Below, in pieces: positions 25,601 to 46,009 of a stretch of DNA of 64,000 nt. Both the position numbers and the translations under genes were made by a program. A model generated the notes under the pieces. The model was given only the letters and a program-made list of their open reading frames with translations, made no database searches and was not told the origin of the DNA. Source of the stretch: Tubulanus polymorphus (lineage: Eukaryota > Animalia > Nemertea). Numbering within the stretch: position 1 is the stretch's first letter; each line of letters starts with the position of its first letter. Location: the NCBI RefSeq assembly GCF_964204645.1, contig NC_134029.1:1550001-1614000 (forward strand). Reading direction: 5' to 3'.

Positions 25601-28600
25601 TCAGGAGACCAGGCCCGAGACCAGGACCCGGTTCAACAGTCAGGAGTGGCAGTTCCACTCTGAGTTTTAAATTATTTCACAAAAACTGTTGAGTAAAACT
25701 TTTACTCAGAACAGTGGAACCGAGTACTGGGCCCCAGTTTCATGAAAAAGTTGTACTCAAATTGTTGCTTTCATTGCTTTTGGTCATAGACTATCTTAGA
25801 CATCTCAATGAAGGAAAGAGTTGAATTTGAATGGAATTTTGAGAAGAAAGTATTTACAAACCCTGAGGTCCCAGACAGTAGCGATACCATCATCACCGGC
25901 TGATACACAACGTTCATCATCAATCTGTAATAAATGACGCACGATATCGGTATGTTTCTGTAGGATCTGTATCTCTGTGTACGGATTTAACGCTTGATCA
26001 TCTTTGATCATTTCAACTTCATGCTGGAAAAGTAATGAAGAATTCACCGTGAAAATATGCACTTTTAAAGTATTATTTTCAATATATTTTCTTATGAAAC
26101 GAGCAAAAAACTATCGAATTCGAAGCAAAAAATAGAGAAATAATTGTTTAAATGCGATAAACAATGATTCACCTTAACGGTATATTTATTTCTTTTATCA
26201 GTGCTTTCAGCATTAAGCGAAAATAAGTAAGTCCAATCCATCAATAGATTATTACAATCAGGGAATTATCCCTGATATGAAACACGATTACTATCCATAT
26301 TGAATCGTTCAGGTATCACGGGATACCTCTGTCCTGTCCTTGAGTTGTATTGACATTCCGATAATGACATATATCAATACATAAACTAGCTATCAATAAA
26401 ACGCTTGTGTCTTTTGTCATTGTAATGCGCTACCTATATTGTACATGTTAATGTTTAGTTTAAGTCGCGCGAGGTCTCAAACAAACACACACGCACACAG
26501 TCCCTCTATACGCCTAGCTGCGCAAATGTATATCAATAATGCCGTCCAGTGTACTACACGTAATTCTCATGATTCTCGTTACAGACTGCTGTTTAAATGT
26601 TTACGGTAAGAATCTACAAACAAGGAACATCGTTGAGATCGCTGGTGTTTTCATGTCAAAATACAATATATCGAATTGTAATAGTTTGATATGGTACTAT
26701 ATAGGCTATAAACATGTAACAGTGTACTGCCCACACCTATCATTTATTTCACCGGTATAAGGGCCTTATTGTTAGGCATAGTTTAGTAAAATAAGCTTTA
26801 CAATCTGTTCAATAAACTGCTAGAAATTTTTACAACTTATTTAAACATATTTATCCGTGAAAAGGATATGTTTAAACGAATTGAAATTTAATTGAGACCA
26901 CAAAATTGGTTGAGCAGTTTCTCCATCATCACTAGGTGCAATAGGTCGATGGATATCAATTTCTGAATGACAATTTTACAGTTGTAGCTGGATGTATGAC
27001 AAGCCAAATGAAGTTGTAGACCCATCATGCAGGCTTTACACCTGAAATGATTTGTTTAATAACATTTTCAGGGTCCAAAACGGTGTTTAAAATGCCGGAT
27101 CAAATGTTATGGTGGCAACGTGCGGTGAAGCACCTGATACCGGGACCGATGGCTCGTAATTCGGCGATTCCCATTCAGCTTTACGCCGGAGAATCGAACG
27201 TCAACGACCCGAACTACGAATATCTGATCATAAACGACGAAATCTGTTCGAATGAATCGGATATATTTCTAGTGATGGTTGTACGTAGCGTGTTCAATCA
27301 GAGAGATCGACGTCAAGCGATACGCGACACGTGGGCAAATCAAAAACTATTCCCGAAACTCAACATCAAAATCGTGTTCATTTTCGGAACGGTGAAAGAT
27401 TGGAGAGACCAGATCGCGTTAGTCGAGGAACACGAAATTTATAAAGACATCGTTCAGCAGACGTTCACCGACTCGTATTCGACTTTACCCATTAAAGATC
27501 AACTCGCGTTTAAATGGGTTTACACGTTCTGCGCGCACGCTCAATTCGCGATGATCGGCAGCGACGAGATCGTCGTCGATATGTTTAAACTCGTGCCGTA
27601 TTTACAGACGTACGCGCTGCGCGAAACGAATCCGAAGCGATTCCTCAAACGAATCGCCGTTTGTTATTTATTCCCGTGTTGCACGCGGGTGCATCGATCG
27701 CGTCAATACAAATACAGCGCGTCGAGGAAGAAGTATCCGGGTGCGGCGTATCCGCAGTATTGTTCCGGTACGGCGTATATAGCACCGACCGCCGTAATCG
27801 AGCGTCTGCTCTCCGCGTCAGTCGATACACCGATGTTTATGCCCGACGATGCGTGGATCGGTGTTTTAGCCGAGAAAGCCGAGATCTCGCTGGAAGATAC
27901 GTATAAATCATTCACAGGTATCAGTAATAAACCGACCGTACTCCGGGATTTTAATAACACTCATTACCTGTCGTCGCCGGTGATGATCGGCGTGTTAGAT
28001 TACGATTTCCCGAATCGTGAAGCGGAAATGATTCGATATTTTTGGCGGATGATTCTGCGACATCATTCCGATAAAATGAACTCATCTTCGCTGTGGGTTT
28101 GGGAAGAGAAGATCACCATCCCGACAGCGATGCCCGATGATGAGAACATTCTCTCTTCGTTAATAACTGAAGGCATCAGTTATGAGTTTGTTATGATCGG
28201 ATTATTGATCATTTTTTGTTTTCTCGTTTGTTCGACTCAAAAACATAATTTTAAACGATGTTTTAAGAGGTCAATTCAAGGACAGATCTAGGACAACAAC
28301 ATGTAGGGCCCTGTTAATAATAAAATGCCAGAATAAAATTTATGCCATTTATTCTCCAGAATAAAAGACGCATTCTCAAGATCACAAATTGTATTTCCAT
28401 CACAGAAAGTCAACCAGTTCACATGCACTAATGTGAACCTCTCATATCATAAATAAGACTGATCATGAGGTTGTAAATTAACTATAGAACTGAGTTGGTT
28501 TCAGTACTGACCCTTTGGAATATAGGAAGGGGTACCTGGATTCGTTTGAAACACCCCAGATCCACCGTTGCTATTTACCGAAGATTGATAAACTGTTGAT

Positions 28601-35349: not shown

Positions 35350-37429
35350 TCACACTCCACAATACTGAAATCAATATTCGTTACTTACTTTGTATTTATC
35401 TAGTTCAGTTTTTAACCCATGCACTTTAGAACGTTCTTTCTCCAAATCAGCAGTTAAGAGACCGACCTTTAAAATAAACATTACAGTATTCCGTGTTATT
35501 GATATTGTCAGGAAGATCAGAGGAAAAATGAATTCAAAAACTCACCTGCTCCGTCAGTTCATCTTTAACCTGGGTTAATTCATCGACCTGCATGAGAACT
35601 TCAGCTTTATCTCTCACTACAAAAATATCAATAATTCATACAGAATTCACTTGAAAGAATACAACATCCAGTTCTGAGGTTGTTAGTTAAAATTAGTTGA
35701 CAGTAGAGTCAAACACAGATCTGTCGAACTGTGCTCTGAACACTTAGGGGCCGATCGCTAAAAAAATTGGTTAAGTTAACCTGTCGATGAATTACCATTG
35801 ATGGAATGCAGTTTCAACTGTAACTACTAAATTCATCTACCAGCTCAATATAACCAACTTATGAACAATTTCACCCAGATGTTTATGTACTTACTTTCTC
35901 CTTGCGCTAATATAACACACAATTGTTTATTTCTCTTTTTCACTTGTTTCAATTCATCCTAAAACAGACAGACAAATAAAACTACCGTGTCTCGATAACA
36001 CTTCTATTCAAACAATGAATCTACTTACTTCCAGTTTACTAACAGTTGCTCTTAAAAATTCAATTTCCTTATCTTTTTTGGTTAATTCTTTTTCATAATG
36101 CGCAGCTCTGGCATTTTCGGCGATATATTGCTGAAATAGAAATATTACGTTACACTCAAATCGAGATTTCAAGATAAATTAATTCACTGAAAGTTTCGTG
36201 GTTTACCTTTGTATATTCTTCTTGTATTTTTTCTTTCAAGATTATTTTCGACACATCTTTCTCCACGTTGTCGAAGAACTTATCATCTGATTGAACAATT
36301 TTCGCGCCGTGTTGTTCATCGGAACCTAACGACGAAATAACGATAAAATAAAGACAATGAGCACCTCAATATCGCAGGTCCCCGTTTATAGACCGGTATT
36401 ATCTTTAATTCAATTGAAAATGAAACAGTGCAGGGTTTATCAATCAGTATTCGCACACTTACTGGACTGTGTACGAGCACGGCCTGATTGATGATGTCCC
36501 GCTTCATCTACTGAATCTAACTGATTAAACTGATCTAAACTTAAAGTCATCGATTTATCTTTCTTCTTTTTTTTCTTGTCTTTAACTTCGGGTTGATGGT
36601 TGTTTTCAGCAGTAGCGGTTTCTAGTGTCTACAAAAGAATTCCTGTGTATATCACTGAAATATCAATTTACGCTAAATTCCTGAAGTTAATTAGTGATTT
36701 TATAGCATATCTGGCAAGGCACCACTAGAGCAAACTCAAAACACGACTCAGATCGACAGCTGTGGGTTAAACTTGACTCTTTAAGTCAATACTTAATGAA
36801 GAACTGTGGAGGAACTAGGCGATGATTCTCTAACCTGTTGTTTTTGTTCCACTTCGATCTTACTCAGTAATAAAGCTTGTTGTAAGTCTCTTTCATAAGC
36901 ATCATCCGTGTACTAAAAATACACATCAAATAGAAGCAGTTTCAAATTAACAAATTGCCACATAACGATACAGTACACCACTGCGTATATATCTTCGCTA
37001 ACCTCTGAATCTAATTTCTTCCATTGTTCCCACTGAGCCTTCGTTTTTGCATTGTCATTATGGTTTCTTTCTTTCGTTCCACCAAACTGAAACATTTATC
37101 ATGCGGCTGAATTTTCAGAATTGAAAAGTGGCACCTGGCTAAGAATGCCCCGTTTTTACGCGATGATGGCAAAAATTAAAAACACACTGACAGCCTCATT
37201 TTCCTACCTCATCACCTTCCACGTTTTGAGATTGTTGCTCTTTTTTGTTCTTTCTCTTCTGCCTTTTCTTAGCGCTCGCTGACATTTGTTGTTGGGTAGT
37301 TTTAGTTTTATCAGCACCAGCGCTTCCAGTCGCTTTTTTCTTCAACCGGATATTCTTCACGTCATCCTTATCGCCGTCATCTTCTATTTTCAGCAGCGCA
37401 AAACGCGAGGCACACGCGATATTCGCCAT
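35350..37429 (-). CDS. GKAP1: G kinase-anchoring protein 1 homolog, multi-exon
   Basis: N-terminal SRFALLKIE; WEQWKKLDSE followed by AYERDLQQALLLSKIE; KKKKDK..LSLDQFN; VKKRNKQL, DELTEQ..GSLTADLEKERSKV coiled coil. Confidence 0.88.
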
Positions 37430-37695
37430 GGTTCACTGATTTTCACTTTCGCTACGCGATTTCTCAAATATGACGAAATTGTTTACGGTGAGTGTAATTA
37501 TTTCATATCCAATATCAAACTATTTAAATCATAACTAATTATTTTTCCGAAGTATTAATTATTCTAGCTATTTTAATGGATATTAATCCCTTTCTAACAG
37601 TTTTTATAGAAATATTTTATATCTTTTTCAAAATGTTGTGGTCAATTCCAGACCACTCTTGCGCTTTTCTCGGTTTCTAGATCTACGATTTGAAA

Positions 37696-39648
37696 ATGCC
37701 AGGAGGCAAGTTTTCGCTTTTTAATATCAAATTCTGAATTGATCGAATGTAAAAATCATCCAACAATGATTTCCGGATTATTTCAAGAATGGCCTAATAA
37801 AAATAACGATGGATTAAACATTTATTTTAGTTGAAATACGCGTTTGAATCGCGACGCAGTCTGCGACTATTTCGCCATCTATCGGCGAACAGAAAATTAC
37901 CTTATTTATAACTCCTAATATCTCATTTTGTGTCTGATTTTAAGTATCGAATTTCATTTGATGTAATCTTTGTGTGTAAATCTACAAAATAGAGCCGATA
38001 TTTTAAGCAGATTTCGTTTAAAACGCTCTTAAATGCCCCTGGTCCATAGCAATATCGCCGAACGCTGTCAGTAGATGGCAGCACCAGATGGCTTTGTCTG
38101 ATTTCGTGAATTAGCTCGTTTTATAAAACGTTTGAATTAATATGAGTTAGTTTGATTTAGATGCCATATTATCATAGCCCCAAAATGGCCATAACTGAAT
38201 AAACAATTCTGATCTGTTAAATTAAACTTTTATTAGTAGTTTGAATGAGATGCCTACGTGGATGGTATGTGATTTGGATTATTAAATTTTTATAGGTCGA
38301 CAGTATCGTAAAAGACGCAAACCGGTAATAGATGAATTGATAGATATTCCTGGAGATGTGATGACGTTACAGATGAACGATCGATCGGATATTGTAAGCT
38401 CATTAGATCTTGCTCCACCGACTAAGAAGTTGATGCGCTGGCGCGAAACAGGAGGCGTCGAAAAACTCTTCTCACAATCAGGACGTCGCTTTCTGTCCAA
38501 ATCTCTACCAGAGGTATTATTAACCAATTGATGAAACAGGCAGGTTTTGATTGAACGTATTCTGGTTAAGGGATCACAAACTCTACCAGCCTTCTCTCTG
38601 GTTAACAGATTGTGATATTCCGAAATAGGAACAAATCGAAAGCTTTCTTTAACTCTGTTTTAGCAATGATTTAAAAATCCCATGCTTAAAACGAAAAAGT
38701 CTGAAATGTTTCTCGAGCTAATAGTTCATTCAACAGGTCAAGAAAACTATTCAAACTCTTATTCCTTCCTAGTGTGAGATTTTGTATTATCTAAGGAGAG
38801 AGAAAAATTTGACTAATTCAAGGATTCAATAACGTGTTATACTTTAATTGTCTTTTTCATTGAAGCTTTTTCTGAGGAACCTCACAACAATTATTGATCA
38901 AGAACCGGAGAATGCAACATTTGAGGATGTAGCTGAGGTGTTTAACGAGGATGAAACAGCGAATGGAAGTGACCAGGAACAAACTCATCCATCAGGTATA
39001 GATCACACACGACCCCCCGGTTTTACAGATTATCAGTTGAGAAAACTATAAAAGCGAGACCAATCATGAATCCTACTTAGATACGTAGATGTTGGCAAAA
39101 GGTTACATCATCTTCATGTCTTAAGCAAACAAGTGTGGAGGAATCTACCATAGCATTTTGTGTCATTGGGCAATCTTAGTCATTCTATACCAACTGGGAA
39201 CCTTTAGAAATTCAGCCACCATCCATTTTATATTCGGAAGTTTAGTAGAGTCAGAACATTCAAAATGGGCTCATTTATCAAGAACTATGGAATTAGATTT
39301 CGGATTAGGAAAGAGGATCCCAGTCAATCCAAACACGAGACATTGAATCAATCATGAATTCTAGTTAGATGCAGACCCCAGTTCAACAATGTTGTCACTT
39401 AAACGTTGAATTGGAGAACTGTGGAACTGAAATGTGCTTTCAGTTTTATTAATATCATACTCTATATTTTGCAGACACTCTTTTTTGTTTAGAATTAAAG
39501 CGTGAACCCGGAGAATGTGAGTACATCATAAATTTGAACTCAATCTATAAAGATATTTGAATGTATCTTGAATCGATTGTGATTTCTGAATTTTTTTTAT
39601 CTAGTCGGACAAACGCTGGTTATAAAAACAGAAAAACTTCATCAGTAA
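37696..39648 (+). CDS. Short (~147 aa) spliced ORF containing only the central STAG/SA-binding segment of RAD21; proposed exons 37696-37705, 38296-38513, 38866-38995, 39475-39516, 39605-39648
   Basis: [55 protein letters not shown]...LFLRNLT matches RAD21 KRKRKLIVD...[28 protein letters not shown]...LFTRCLT; exons sum to 444 nt in one frame; first intron GC-AG (AG/GCAAGT). Confidence 0.7.
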
Positions 39649-39650
39649 CA

Positions 39651-42600
39651 ATGAATGAGGATCAGTTGAGGGAGGTTTATAACGATATCAGTGAGGGAAG
39701 AATCAACGACGAAAACCTTCGATTTCTAAAAACAGTTTGCAGCAAATCGGTTGAAGGTAAAATTGATAAAGAATCGTAGGCAGTTGTGCAGTTGTATGGT
39801 TGTAAAAATATGAAAATTCATCAATTTTTATTTCTTTTTAAACAGGAATTTTAGTAAACAGAAAATTTAGTTTATTATTCCTGACAACATTAATGGAGGT
39901 ATTTGAATCTGAGTCTACTTTAGTTCAAGGATTCATTTCTGCTCCTGAAGTTTTGACATTTCTGGTGAGTTTTGTGCTGACAACTATTTCTTATGTTTTA
40001 TGAAGTAATATTTTGAGATTAATGAAATGTTGTTGTTTTTTCAGGTAACTGAATTAGAAAACAGTGATAAATTTATATCATACAGCGCTTGTAAAGCTTT
40101 AGTGTGTTTATGTCAAATCTTATCAGAAGTAAGTAGAAATCACCTCCATTTTATGTTCTCGCTTTTCATATAAAATGAAGGTAATTTAGAGAATGTTTTG
40201 TTGTTTATTTAGAAGGATCAAATCAGCAGAGTGGTGACTACTGTATGTCAGTTTACTGCACAATCAACTACGACCAGTATTCAAATACAGTTAGATCTGG
40301 CTGTGAAATTCTTGTCATCTGATTTCAAAAACGAAGGTGCGTTGAAATATTGTCGTGGTTCCAAACTCTTTTTAAGTCATCCGATTTGAGCCTATCTTTA
40401 TGTTGATGCCATAAATCCAAATGACGACTAACACTTGTTGATTGATTTGGAAATATAAACGGAGAGACTGGTGGGATGACTTATATGATGGCGAAGTGAG
40501 TTTGACTGTATTATAGCAGCAAAGCTTCTATTAATGCTTCTATTAATTAACAAAAAACTTAATGAATTCATTGCCCAAACTAGCCGGCTTTTACAGCCCC
40601 CAAAATTCCATCTAAGAAATATTTCTTTTTTGCAGTTTTTCAGAAAGGTTTCATCGATGTGTTAGTGACGAACTGGAATCGTGTTGTTAATTCTTCTCTC
40701 TTGGATCAAACTATATCAAATTCGTATACTCGACTGATCTTCATGAAACTGTGGATGAAAGCCTGTAAAACAGGCTTCAAAATAGAGGCGCATTTAAAAA
40801 CTACCGTTAAAAACAATGAAGCGGATTCTTGTGAAAGTGTAAATAGTTGTTTTATCGATTTAGTTCGGTTTCCGTATAAACGACGAGAGACGTTATTGAA
40901 TATTTTACTGACGTCTGATGACAGGATGTTGTGTTTTAACGTAATGAATGTCTTACTGTTATACTTCGATATCGCGGCGAAATCTTACGTCGAATCGGAT
41001 CACGATCGAGATTATCTCGATCTGTCGTCGAAAGTCGTTGAGATTTGTAACGATGAGGAACGTGGTTTTATGGATTTACCGTACCACAGCGGATTTATCG
41101 GATTCGGTGGCAGTCAGTGTAGTAGGGATACGGAGTGGAAACCGGATTCACAGCTGTTGAGGAAAGTTTGTCTGTTAGTTCTACGAAGCTCGCAACTACA
41201 ACTGACAAAATCAGGTCAGTCTTTTATACATCTCTTAACAGGGTGGCGCCATTGACCTGTAGAAATCTGGGAAAACTCGGGGAATTTGACAAATTTTGCC
41301 AAAAACTGGAGATCAGTGAGTGTGAAAAAATGGAATTAGTAAGTGGGTGGAAACTGGCTGTCCTGCTTTAGTTAAAAACCTATATTTATCATTTTATGTA
41401 AACTTATTTCTGTATTTCATTTCTAGTTTCTGGCGACTCGAGTCTCGTATCTAAATGTCTGAATCGGCTCGAAATGTTGTTGAAAACCAAAGTGAGAAAC
41501 GATGAAGATTTCCAGACGAATCTGCTGCGTGTATTCGCTGATCAAGATAATGCTTTGATTGATTGTATGTTGATTCTACTTGATCTACACATTAAAATTA
41601 CTACAGCACGGTCAGTATTAGAGGATATTCCAGAATATACCTCCAAAACACAGTTTGGTGTCAACTCAAACGTTTATACATGAGACCTTAAGAGTCAAAC
41701 TTTAAAATATTGAACAGGGGTCAGTCACTGGGTTGTTTTCAGGCTTTTTACCTGGGTCTTCAAGACTCATTTCTACAGTTGTTGTTGTTTTTTGAATTTG
41801 GCTATGAGTTGAAATTAGCTTGTTAACCCTTACAGTGCTGACTAATCAATACCCTATAGTGCTGGAGATAATTTGAAAATTTTGAAAAATTCCGCCATAG
41901 TGTGTTGAATAATGGGCATACCACTATAGTGCGTACTAGCAAAATCCATCACCAATTCATACACTGCACTGCGGTGTAGACGCATGGCGGTGTAGACGCA
42001 CTGAAAGGGTTAAGTTGAAAAGTCAAATGAGAACTCACAATTGTGAAACTTATTCCTGATAATAATGATAGTAGTTTTGATGGATTTTATTTTGTTTTTC
42101 AGACCGGATGAACTCAAACACCTGAATCCTCACGGAATATTCATCAAATTTCTAAAGATAATACTGTACGATCAATCGGTATTGTTAGATTTTGTGACAT
42201 CTCCCGAAACAAGTTTTCTGGAATATTTAGTCAGGTATCTGCGCTATGCTATCACTGATTGGTACAATTTCGTTGATTTTCATAAAACGTGTAAGAAAAC
42301 AAATTCATCGGATACAGAAATTCATTCATCGGAGAATAATCCGAATTCTCATAAAACCGATGATTCTTCGGAATCAGACGATGAAAGTTTTAATCTTGTA
42401 AAACGTGTTTGCCGTGATAGAGACTTCGATCCATCTTCATTGAAATGTGAAGATGACAGTAACAAGGCACAGGAAACTGAGTCTAGTGTTTTAAACGGTG
42501 TACAGTCTGAGAGTGTGTCGAATTTATTACATCTAGAAGCCTATGAAAGTTCTAGCTCTGATGACGACGAGGAAATAGTCAAACATCCGGCTGACGATAC

Positions 42601-42724
42601 GATGACTTGTTTGATAAGATTACGTATGAAATTAGGGAATCTAAATTCGCATGATTTAGTGCCATTTAATGTAAAACCACTCATTAAACTTATTGAGAAA
42701 TGTGAACATCTTTATGAGCAATAA
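39651..42724 (+). CDS. LINS1: Protein Lines homolog; exons approx. 39651-39757, 39846-39964, 40045-40128, 40212-40337, 40636-41214, 41427-41609, 42103-42724
   Basis: FIGFGG..LLRKVCLLVLRS, VFADQDNALIDCM, NPHGIF..YDQSVLLDFVTSPETSFLEYLVRYLR (Lines_N); CLIRLR..LVPFNVKPLIKLIEKCE (Lines_C). Confidence 0.9.
41823..42013. mobile_element. piggyBac-type MITE with TTAA target duplication in a Lines intron
   Basis: ttaa-cccttacagtgc ... gcactgaaaggg-ttaa. Confidence 0.85.
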
Positions 42725-44725: not shown

Positions 44726-46009
44726 ATGCTTCTGGTGCCTCGGAATCGAGCTTATACAAGAATAATCAGTCGAATGAACACTGGATATTCATTTATACTA
44801 TCATCACTAATATCGGCTAGTTTATTAAGCAATATGGCGACCAGCTCAACCTCGGGCGCTGAAAATATCTCGAAAAAGTTGAAAAATGTTATCGTTTTCG
44901 GTGGAAATGGATTTATAGGTGGCGCCACCGTGCGACAGTTAATCGCGAGTTCAAAATACGACGTAACAATCGTGAATCGTGGCAGTTGGAACTGGGATTC
45001 ACGAGACAATATTAAACCCCATGTTAGACATATTAACTGCGACCGTTACGGTGAGGGTTCGATCGGCTATGTGTGTCCGGAACTGGTTAAACTGGTCGAT
45101 TCAATCGACTCGATTCATGCGGTGGTCGATTTCAGCGCGTACGAGAGTCGAGTCATCGTCGACGCGGTGAAATTATTAACCCGTAAACCGGTCGGAGTTT
45201 ATATCTACATCAGTTCCGATTCGGTTTACGAGGTTTGTAATAAAACTCACGAGAATCCGTCGATTGAGACTGACGCCGTACGACCGGAGAACGCGGCAGA
45301 ACGAGAACGACTGAATTTATTCGATTCTTACGGGCATCGAAAACTTGAAGGCGAAGAGGTTCTGTTGAAAATGCGGGCGAACGATGGTCCTGCATACGTG
45401 TTTTTACGCTTACCCGATGTGATCGGTCCACGCGACTCGACCGATCGCTGGTGGATCTATCAACTGTGGATAAAGCTATCGGCGTACACGCGTGAACCGG
45501 TGCGATTGCCGCGGTCCGTGTCCGGGGAACCGCTTAGTTTCGTTTACGTAAACGACGTAGCGCGGTGCATCGCAGGGATCGTCTCGACCCGAGATAAAAC
45601 CGTTTATAACGAGGCGTATAACCTAGCGTTCGACGAGACGGTGTCTTTAGAACAACTGCTCGAAATGATCCGAGACAATCTCGTAGAAACGCAAACTAAA
45701 TTCATTTACGACGAAGACGTAGAGAAGGAGTTTTATTTGTATCCGTCGGTGACGAAAGGCCCGATCGATATAGCTAAAGCGCGGCGGAAATTAAACTGGA
45801 AACCGACGTCGCTTGAAGACGCCGTTCGACAAACCGTTCAGTTCTACGAGAAAGCGATGAAAAACGCGAATTTCAAACGAGAAATTAAAGAAATCGTGCG
45901 CAACCTTCGAAAAGACGTGTTTCATTCTAATACGTTGTTGTCTGCCGGTTTAGACGAATTGTACGGTTACAATTTACACGCGGAAAAACAAAAACATGAT
46001 GAACTTTAA
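44726..46009 (+). CDS. Intronless extended SDR / NAD-dependent epimerase-dehydratase (CSP41-like) with putative signal peptide and C-terminal HDEL; start may be the second Met (MNTGYSFIL)
   Basis: VFGGNGFIG Rossmann motif, VNRG, VVDFSAY, YIYISSDSVY, YGHRK (YxxxK), LRLPDVIGPRD, SFVYVNDVA; ends KHDEL. Confidence 0.9.
   Translation: MLLVPRNRAYTRIISRMNTGYSFILSSLISASLLSNMATSSTSGAENISKKLKNVIVFGGNGFIGGATVRQLIASSKYDVTIVNRGSWNWDSRDNIKPHVRHINCDRYGEGSIGYVCPELVKLVDSIDSIHAVVDFSAYESRVIVDAVKLLTRKPVGVYIYISSDSVYEVCNKTHENPSIETDAVRPENAAERERLNLFDSYGHRKLEGEEVLLKMRANDGPAYVFLRLPDVIGPRDSTDRWWIYQLWIKLSAYTREPVRLPRSVSGEPLSFVYVNDVARCIAGIVSTRDKTVYNEAYNLAFDETVSLEQLLEMIRDNLVETQTKFIYDEDVEKEFYLYPSVTKGPIDIAKARRKLNWKPTSLEDAVRQTVQFYEKAMKNANFKREIKEIVRNLRKDVFHSNTLLSAGLDELYGYNLHAEKQKHDEL

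What the first reader, a model, noticed from the sequence alone, without database searches (positions are those of the whole stretch)
37696..39648. Stand-alone 'mini-RAD21': spliced gene encoding only the STAG/SA-binding segment of the cohesin kleisin
Seen: five exons with intact splice sites join into an open 147-codon frame ([83 protein letters not shown] + acidic tail). It has its own ATG in a 10-nt first coding exon with a consensus GC donor. There is no room for RAD21's N-terminal SMC3-binding or C-terminal SMC1-binding domains, because GKAP1 starts 266 bp upstream on the other strand and Lines follows directly. Known: this central RAD21 segment binds STAG1/2 (SA/Scc3), and the composite surface recruits CTCF, WAPL and shugoshin. 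Inference: the protein could bind STAG without closing a cohesin ring, acting as a decoy or a cohesin-independent STAG adaptor, i.e. a possibly undescribed cohesin regulator.
Basis: partly seen in the sequence, partly recalled or inferred. Interest (0 to 1): 0.85.

Follow-up and report, generated by a model that had tools for sequence, protein, structure and literature searches.

The report
STAG-binding-only RAD21 fragment gene before Lines
A ribbon worm keeps, under clear purifying selection, an old two-exon copy of the part of cohesin's RAD21 that grips STAG. The copy is set in a 147-codon open frame that stops 2 bases before the Lines start codon, so it may be a natural STAG-binding mini-protein, but whether it is expressed or binds STAG is untested.

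Summary
Exons 37696-37705, 38296-38513, 38866-38995, 39475-39516 and 39605-39648 join into an open 147-codon frame.

- **Origin.** Exon 2 matches human RAD21 residues 319-377, the SA2-binding segment in solved structures (E 5e-17). The genome is Tubulanus polymorphus. It has one full-length RAD21 on another contig, one STAG locus, and no other kleisin domain in this window. Exons 2 and 3 are an old DNA-level copy of two consecutive RAD21 exons, with all four splice positions and phases kept.
- **Selection.** Introns no longer align and third codon positions are saturated, yet 56% of residues are identical. 25 of 33 near-invariant columns are retained, and a neutral simulation is rejected (P < 5e-5). 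The exons have therefore been selected as coding sequence.
- **Gene model.** The 10-nt ATG exon has the only strong donor available (chance about 2%). The frame ends CAG-TAA-ca-ATG at the Lines start. I found the same layout in front of SBDS in this genome.

Untested: no RNA run was available, no orthologue was found, and STAG binding could not be modelled. A RAD21-Lines fusion (exon 3 to Lines exon 2 is in frame) and a dead relic remain as rivals. The scan noted the stop-ATG layout before, on this same window.

The parts
37196..37429 (-). Its ATG is at 37429.
   Evidence: 77-aa ORF. GKAP1 identity was not tested (no Pfam hit).
37430..37695 (.). 266-nt interval between the two divergent ATGs. 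Inferred to be a shared bidirectional promoter and leader.
   Evidence: Coordinates. Promoter function is inferred, not tested.
37696..37705 (+). Exon 1: ATG plus 7 nt with an AG|GCAAGT donor, phase 1. A is at -3 of the ATG.
   Evidence: It is the only one of 17 candidates with a 7/8 donor match. Chance 0.022. No RNA support.
38296..38513 (+). Exon 2: copy of canonical RAD21 exon A. It carries a basic NLS-like cluster and the core STAG-binding segment.
   Evidence: PDB hits at E 5e-17. 56% identical to C8 RAD21. Same phase-1 acceptor and phase-0 donor as the canonical exon, 218 versus 224 nt.
38866..38995 (+). Exon 3: copy of canonical RAD21 exon B (LF.RNLTT followed by an acidic stretch). Phase-0 acceptor, phase-1 donor.
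   Evidence: It is 15 codons longer than the canonical exon, and both splice phases are kept.
39475..39516 (+). Exon 4: a 42-nt putative cassette exon, a multiple of 3. No similarity to RAD21.
   Evidence: Splice sites. Skipping it leaves the frame and the stop unchanged. No RNA support.
39605..39648 (+). End of the mini-RAD21 frame, inside the exon that carries the Lines start. TAA at 39646-39648.
   Evidence: The layout is CAG-TAA-ca-ATG.
39651..42724 (+). Lines gene: seven coding exons, 605 aa.
   Evidence: Model. LINES_N and LINES_C found.

Best explanation
A ribbon-worm lineage duplicated two consecutive exons of RAD21 at the DNA level, with the intron between them, and has kept them as coding sequence for a long time. 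The copy lies between GKAP1 and Lines. It gained a short ATG exon next to the GKAP1 promoter region and is most likely spliced into the leader of the Lines mRNA.

The product would be a protein of about 147 aa. It has a basic nuclear-import-like cluster, the RAD21 segment that lies along STAG (SA/Scc3), an acidic stretch and a short novel tail. Its frame stops 2 nt before the Lines ATG, which would make a two-protein mRNA. It lacks the SMC3- and SMC1-binding ends, so it cannot close a cohesin ring. The likeliest action is to occupy the kleisin groove of the single STAG protein, either competing with full-length RAD21 or giving STAG a cohesin-independent partner.

- Shown: homology, origin by partial duplication, absence of the kleisin end domains, purifying selection, and an intact frame and splice sites.
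- Inferred: transcription, the exon 1, 4 and 5 connections, translation, STAG binding and the effect on cohesin.
For: 1. Exon 2 aligns to human RAD21 319-377 in SA2-SCC1 structures, E 5e-17.
2. The genome has one complete RAD21 on C8 (N domain, central segment, C domain), 100% identical to XP_074656205 of Tubulanus polymorphus. It has one STAG locus.
3. All four splice positions and phases of exons 2 and 3 equal those of the canonical exons, so the copy arose from DNA, not from an mRNA.
4. The duplication is old:
   - Introns do not align; only 172 nt of exon 2 align, at 65%.
   - Third codon positions differ at 62%, and dS cannot be computed.
   - First and second positions differ at 36% and 26%, and dN is 0.35.
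   - 24 of the 40 identical residues use different codons.
5. With the observed 41.7% nucleotide difference spread evenly over the sites, simulated identity averages 30% and never reached the observed 55.6% in 20,000 runs. Only 5.5% of runs kept the frame open.
6. The copy keeps 25 of 33 columns that are at least 90% conserved among 209 canonical segments, but only 12 of 39 other columns (Fisher P 1.7e-4, Mann-Whitney P 3e-6).
7. The SCC1 residues that form the pocket for the YxF phenylalanine (human S334, I337, L341; PMC10279526) are G, M, M in the copy and S, M, L in the worm's own RAD21.
8. Exon 1 is better than chance (P 0.022).
9. The same stop-2 nt-ATG layout (CAG-TAA-ct-ATG) precedes the Pfam-confirmed SBDS gene in this genome. 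Other notes list 12 such cases.
Against: - No RNA evidence. All three runs that hold the locus are DNA contigs that cover introns, and no splice joint was seen.
- No protein containing exon 2 is in the 1.84-billion representative library (no hit below 1e-30) or in the length-limited searches. The RefSeq annotation of this assembly therefore probably does not call it as a CDS.
- No orthologue was found anywhere. All 323 retrieved relatives are closer to canonical RAD21 than to the copy.
- The copy sits on a very long branch, 1.24 against a median of 0.2. Eight near-invariant columns have changed, so binding may be weakened or retargeted.
- Many ATGs lie in the 444-nt frame ahead of the Lines start, so Lines cannot be reached by leaky scanning. 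Reinitiation after a frame this long is usually inefficient (established knowledge).
- Selection inferred from a paralogue comparison covers the whole history since duplication and cannot exclude recent death.
Confidence: 0.5

Rival explanations
1. The RAD21-derived exons are alternative 5' coding exons of Lines. Exon 3 splices directly to Lines exon 2 (39846), giving a 689-aa protein that carries the STAG-binding segment at the N-terminus of Lines and so tethers this transcriptional regulator to STAG or cohesin.
For: The exon 3 donor and the Lines exon 2 acceptor are both phase 1, and the joined frame is open to the Lines stop. Purifying selection on exons 2-3 fits this reading equally well. 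A fusion isoform could be hidden under a Lines representative in the clustered library.
Against: Matching phase has a 1-in-3 chance. Two good acceptors (39475, 39605) would have to be skipped. Exon 4 joined to Lines exon 2 creates a TGA. A stop placed exactly 2 nt before the Lines ATG, as at SBDS, is better explained by a two-cistron layout. No such protein appeared in the unrestricted-length search.
Confidence: 0.15
2. The exons are a relic. They are either the last two exons of a once complete kleisin paralogue that was selected for a long time and recently lost its other exons, or copied exons that are now only untranslated leader sequence of Lines. No protein with a function of its own is made today.
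For: No RNA, peptide or annotation support. No orthologue. Very long branch. The paralogue comparison cannot date the end of selection.
Against: The frame is open and all four inherited splice sites are intact. A new ATG exon has a near-consensus donor in the right phase (P 0.022). No decayed remnants of other RAD21 exons lie anywhere in the 64 kb. The frame closes precisely at the Lines start.
Confidence: 0.2
3. The frame is translated only as a regulatory upstream ORF that throttles Lines translation, and the peptide itself has no target.
For: Its position is in the Lines leader, with a stop next to the Lines ATG.
Against: A purely regulatory upstream ORF would not retain the RAD21 residues that canonical proteins conserve while synonymous sites saturate.
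Confidence: 0.05

Closest known systems
Central STAG/Scc3-binding segment of RAD21/SCC1 (human residues about 321-395; PDB 4pju, 6qnx, 7zjs, 6wg3)
   Same: Clear sequence homology over 59-70 residues (E 5e-17). The invariant core [20 protein letters not shown] is intact. Hydrophobic residues are kept at the two SCC1 positions (I337, L341) whose mutation impairs SGO1 binding to SA2-SCC1.
   Different: Here the segment is a protein of its own, or an N-terminal module, without the SMC3- and SMC1-binding ends, the separase sites, or the NIPBL/PDS5-binding part. It has diverged about six times more than canonical segments.
Full-length alpha-kleisin paralogues (RAD21L, REC8, and the Drosophila and C. 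elegans meiotic kleisins)
   Same: They also arose by duplication of a kleisin gene and were retained by selection.
   Different: Those paralogues keep both SMC-binding ends and form rings. This copy has neither end.
Truncated-paralogue inhibitors and microProteins (for example SRGAP2C, PMC6904453; Id proteins and LITTLE ZIPPER, from general knowledge)
   Same: A partial duplicate keeps only the interaction module of a multi-domain parent, and could act by occupying the parent's partner.
   Different: No such case is known to me for cohesin, and two paper searches found none. Expression and binding are untested here. SRGAP2C binds its parent, whereas this protein would bind the parent's partner.
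Animal two-protein (dicistronic) mRNAs with adjacent stop and start
   Same: The stop lies 2 nt before the next ATG in one exon. The same layout occurs at SBDS in this genome, and other readers noted further cases.
   Different: A shared transcript is not shown here. The upstream frame is long (147 codons) and is a derived gene fragment rather than an old conserved small gene.

Membership tests
RAD21/Rec8 alpha-kleisin | N-terminal SMC3-neck-binding domain (Pfam Rad21_Rec8_N, PF04825) | tested here: not met
   Found only at C8:13535125-13535924 in the whole genome. No tblastn trace in the window.
RAD21/Rec8 alpha-kleisin | C-terminal winged-helix SMC1-binding domain (Pfam Rad21_Rec8, PF04824) | tested here: not met
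   Found only at C8:13526035-13526169. No trace in the window.
RAD21/Rec8 alpha-kleisin | Central STAG/Scc3-binding segment | tested here: met
   E 5e-17 to human RAD21 319-377 in SA2-SCC1 structures. 56% identical to the worm's own RAD21. Exon structure is shared.
RAD21/Rec8 alpha-kleisin | Physical binding to STAG | not testable with these tools
Truncated-paralogue decoy / microProtein | Derived from a larger multi-domain protein and keeps only its interaction module | tested here: met
   Two-exon DNA duplicate of RAD21 with conserved intron positions. The end domains are absent.
Truncated-paralogue decoy / microProtein | Maintained by selection as a coding sequence | tested here: met
   dS is saturated while dN is 0.35. 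Neutral simulation gives P < 5e-5. Changes avoid conserved columns, P 1.7e-4.
Truncated-paralogue decoy / microProtein | Expressed as a small protein that sequesters the parent's partner | not testable with these tools
   No RNA run holds the locus. No matching protein is in the databases.
Dicistronic mRNA | Both frames on one mature transcript | not testable with these tools
   Only DNA contigs were available. The genomic layout TAA-ca-ATG within one exon is present.

The most novel reading that the evidence does not exclude
Tubulanus polymorphus makes a kleisin-derived mini-protein consisting of little more than the STAG-binding module of RAD21, translated as the first cistron of a mini-RAD21/Lines mRNA. 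It would bind the single STAG protein without SMC contacts and so tune how much STAG is available to cohesin, or give STAG a cohesin-independent role. It would be the first natural 'STAG-only' kleisin fragment gene, and one example of a stop-start-coupled two-protein mRNA class that appears recurrent in this genome.
Probability: 0.35. Interest if true: 0.8.

Novelty: new variant of a known kind. Interest (0 to 1): 0.6.

Why it matters
Cohesin regulators such as CTCF, WAPL, shugoshin and MCM3 dock on the surface formed jointly by STAG and this RAD21 segment. STAG proteins are also suspected to have roles outside the cohesin ring. A naturally selected protein made of only this segment would be a ready-made tool and a natural experiment. 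It would show that an animal regulates STAG availability with a kleisin fragment, or uses a STAG-fragment pair without SMC proteins.

It would also be a clean case of a partial gene duplicate becoming a new small gene by capture into a neighbour's leader. Finally, it adds to signs that this ribbon worm often encodes two proteins on one mRNA with the stop placed next to the second start, a translation mechanism that could be studied there.

Tried and rejected
- **RNA evidence.** No splice joints were seen.
- **Annotation of the source genome.** Exact look-ups of a neighbouring single-exon ORF and of both RefSeq RAD21 isoforms returned nothing, because records of the window's own genome are withheld.
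- **Orthologues.** Three protein searches gave only canonical-type RAD21 pieces, at most 66% identical. None of the 323 proteins was closer to the copy than to canonical RAD21.
  - P0122 (66% identical, 360 aa) is a large exon of a GC-rich organism's RAD21, not an orthologue.
  - A search with the last Lines exon, meant to fetch relatives' Lines loci for synteny, found nothing.
  - The source of the closest canonical relative (P0020) is an unnamed ENA assembly.
- **Reading exon 5 in the Lines frame.** Upstream exon 4 gives a TGA in that frame, and exon 4 joined to Lines exon 2 also gives a TGA. I also saw no UGGGA (calicivirus-type reinitiation motif) in the last 86 nt before the stop when reading the sequence.
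- **Poly(A) signal after exon 3.** Only one ATTAAA was found, inside exon 4, so a transcript ending in intron 3 has no support.
- **Papers.** Hara et al. 2014 (SA2-SCC1 structure) is not held in the library.
- **Complex prediction.** None was sent, because no contiguous STAG sequence was available.
- **Joined 147-aa model.** Exons were searched separately by reference, and joining was done only inside scripts to check frames.

Full report
**What is there**

The junction numbers in the finding are the first bases of exons 2 to 5. With that read, the exons are 37696-37705, 38296-38513, 38866-38995, 39475-39516 and 39605-39648. They join into 444 nt, an open frame of 147 codons ending at TAA 39646-39648. 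Every internal exon has an AG acceptor behind a pyrimidine run and a GT donor. Exon 1 has the donor AG|GCAAGT.

The 72 complete codons of exon 2 match human RAD21 residues 319-377 in the solved SA2-SCC1 complexes (4pju, 6qnx, 7zjs, 6wg3) at E 5e-17. Pfam has no model for this segment.

The downstream gene is Lines (LINES_N and LINES_C). I built a seven-exon, 605-aa model that starts at ATG 39651, 2 nt after the TAA. On the other strand an ORF begins at 37429, 266 nt from the first ATG. I did not test its GKAP1 identity.

**Whose genome, and what else it holds**

The window is contig C5:1,550,001-1,614,000 of a 268-Mb assembly. A complete RAD21 lies on contig C8, with the N domain at 13,535,125-13,535,924, the central segment at 13,528,923-13,529,132 and the C domain at 13,526,035-13,526,169. 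Its exons are 100% identical to XP_074656205 and XP_074656206, RAD21 of the palaeonemertean Tubulanus polymorphus.

- The central segment occurs only twice in the genome: there, and in this window at 56% identity.
- tblastn of the whole RAD21 protein against the 64-kb window finds nothing except exons 2 and 3. The claim that neither SMC-binding end is present holds.
- STAG is a single locus on C9.

**Origin**

- Exon 2 corresponds exactly to one canonical exon. Both begin in phase 1 inside a glycine codon and both end in phase 0 after LP(E/K). The lengths are 218 and 224 nt.
- Exon 3 corresponds to the next canonical exon. Both begin in phase 0 at (L/V)F.RNLTT and both end in phase 1. The lengths are 130 and 85 nt.

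The copy was therefore made from genomic DNA, with its intron, and not from an mRNA.

The duplication is old. Nothing outside 172 nt of exon 2 aligns between the two loci. Third codon positions differ at 62%, so dS cannot be computed.

**Selection**

- Over exon 2 the codon positions differ by 36%, 26% and 62%, and dN is 0.35. Of the 40 identical residues, 24 use different codons.
- If the observed 41.7% nucleotide difference fell evenly on all sites, amino-acid identity would average 30%. It never reached the observed 55.6% in 20,000 simulations, and the frame stayed open in only 5.5% of them.
- Against 209 distinct canonical segments, the copy keeps 25 of 33 columns that are at least 90% conserved, but only 12 of 39 others (Fisher P 1.7e-4, Mann-Whitney P 3e-6).
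- The invariant core [20 protein letters not shown] is intact.
- Human SCC1 residues S334, I337 and L341 help form the pocket for the phenylalanine of the YxF motif (PMC10279526). The matching residues are G, M, M in the copy and S, M, L in the worm's own RAD21.

The copy has thus evolved under the same pattern of constraint as the STAG-binding segment, only more loosely. Its terminal branch is 1.24 changes per site against a median of 0.2. A tree that keeps it together with the Tubulanus RAD21 is not rejected (p-AU 0.84).

This argues against a neutral partial duplicate. It does not show that selection continues today.

**The gene model around the copied exons**

- **Exon 1.** It is the only one of 17 possible ATG-plus-phase-1-donor exons in the 866-nt interval with a near-consensus donor. 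A candidate this good arises in 2.2% of Markov simulations.
- **Exon 4.** It is 42 nt, so including or skipping it leaves the same stop.
- **The stop.** It lies in the exon that carries the Lines ATG, as CAG-TAA-ca-ATG.

Other notes of this scan list a dozen apparent two-cistron units in this genome, and this layout was already noted on this window. I checked one of the others myself. On contig C45 a multi-exon upstream frame ends CAG-TAA-ct-ATG, where the ATG opens a Pfam-confirmed SBDS gene. The other note calls the upstream frame LYRM7. Its exons were too short for Pfam, so I did not confirm that name.

The recurrence makes a shared transcript the likeliest form here. How ribosomes would reach Lines after a 147-codon frame full of ATGs is unknown.

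**What could not be tested**

No splice joints were seen. These contigs do confirm the assembly across the whole locus, and a second sample holds parts of exons 2 and 3 without differences.
- Records of the window's own genome are withheld from the contig look-up.
- No protein containing exon 2 exists in the 1.84-billion representative library (no hit below 1e-30) or in the two length-limited searches. RefSeq therefore probably does not call this frame as a CDS. That is expected if it sits in the Lines leader.
- No orthologue was found. The last Lines exon also found nothing, so the databases seem to hold no close relative. Absence of an orthologue therefore says little.
- STAG binding could not be modelled, because no contiguous STAG sequence was available.
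- As the operators required, the joined 147-aa model was not sent to any search tool. Exons were searched one by one by reference.

**Rivals**

1. Exon 3 and Lines exon 2 are both phase 1, and the joined frame is open, giving a 689-aa RAD21-segment/Lines fusion. I give this 0.15.
2. A relic that is no longer translated. I give this 0.2.
3. A purely regulatory upstream ORF. I give this 0.05, because it would not preserve RAD21's conserved residues.

**Verdict**

It is a selectively maintained partial paralogue of RAD21 that encodes only the STAG-binding module. It is not a kleisin by definition, since both SMC-binding ends are absent. It is best compared with truncated-paralogue inhibitors and microProteins.

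The decoy or adaptor function is plausible but rests on inference. I know of no kleisin-fragment gene of this kind, and two paper searches found none.

Noticed in passing
window 41823-42013: A 191-bp element with 16-nt terminal inverted repeats (TTAACCCTTACAGTGC / GCACTGAAAGGGTTAA) lies in Lines intron 6. Its k-mer depth is about 80,000 against about 39 for the flanks, so there are roughly 2,000 copies. It looks like a TTAA-ended (piggyBac-type) miniature transposon.
   Followed up: partly
L012 1457-1464 (G000:C45, about 61,240): A multi-exon upstream frame (called LYRM7 by another note; I did not confirm that) ends CAG-TAA-ct-ATG, where the ATG opens a Pfam-confirmed SBDS gene. This is the same stop-2 nt-start layout as mini-RAD21/Lines.
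   Followed up: partly
window 38995 / 39846: The exon 3 donor and the Lines exon 2 acceptor share phase 1, so skipping exons 4-5 would give an open 689-aa RAD21-segment/Lines fusion. Exon 4 joined to Lines exon 2 gives a TGA.
   Followed up: partly
window 39573: The contig of run X1 lacks 12 nt here, in intron 4, 32 nt before the exon 5 acceptor. This is an indel or assembly difference near the polypyrimidine tract.
   Followed up: no
window 40216-40888: The second sample (X2) carries a divergent haplotype across Lines intron 4 and the start of exon 5: 17 substitutions plus a 4-nt insertion in 673 nt. That is far more than elsewhere in the locus.
   Followed up: no
window 44726-46009 and 27047-28291: Two long single-exon ORFs on the + strand: a 427-aa NAD-dependent epimerase/dehydratase family protein and a 414-aa Galactosyl_T (beta-1,3-galactosyltransferase-type) protein.
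   Followed up: partly
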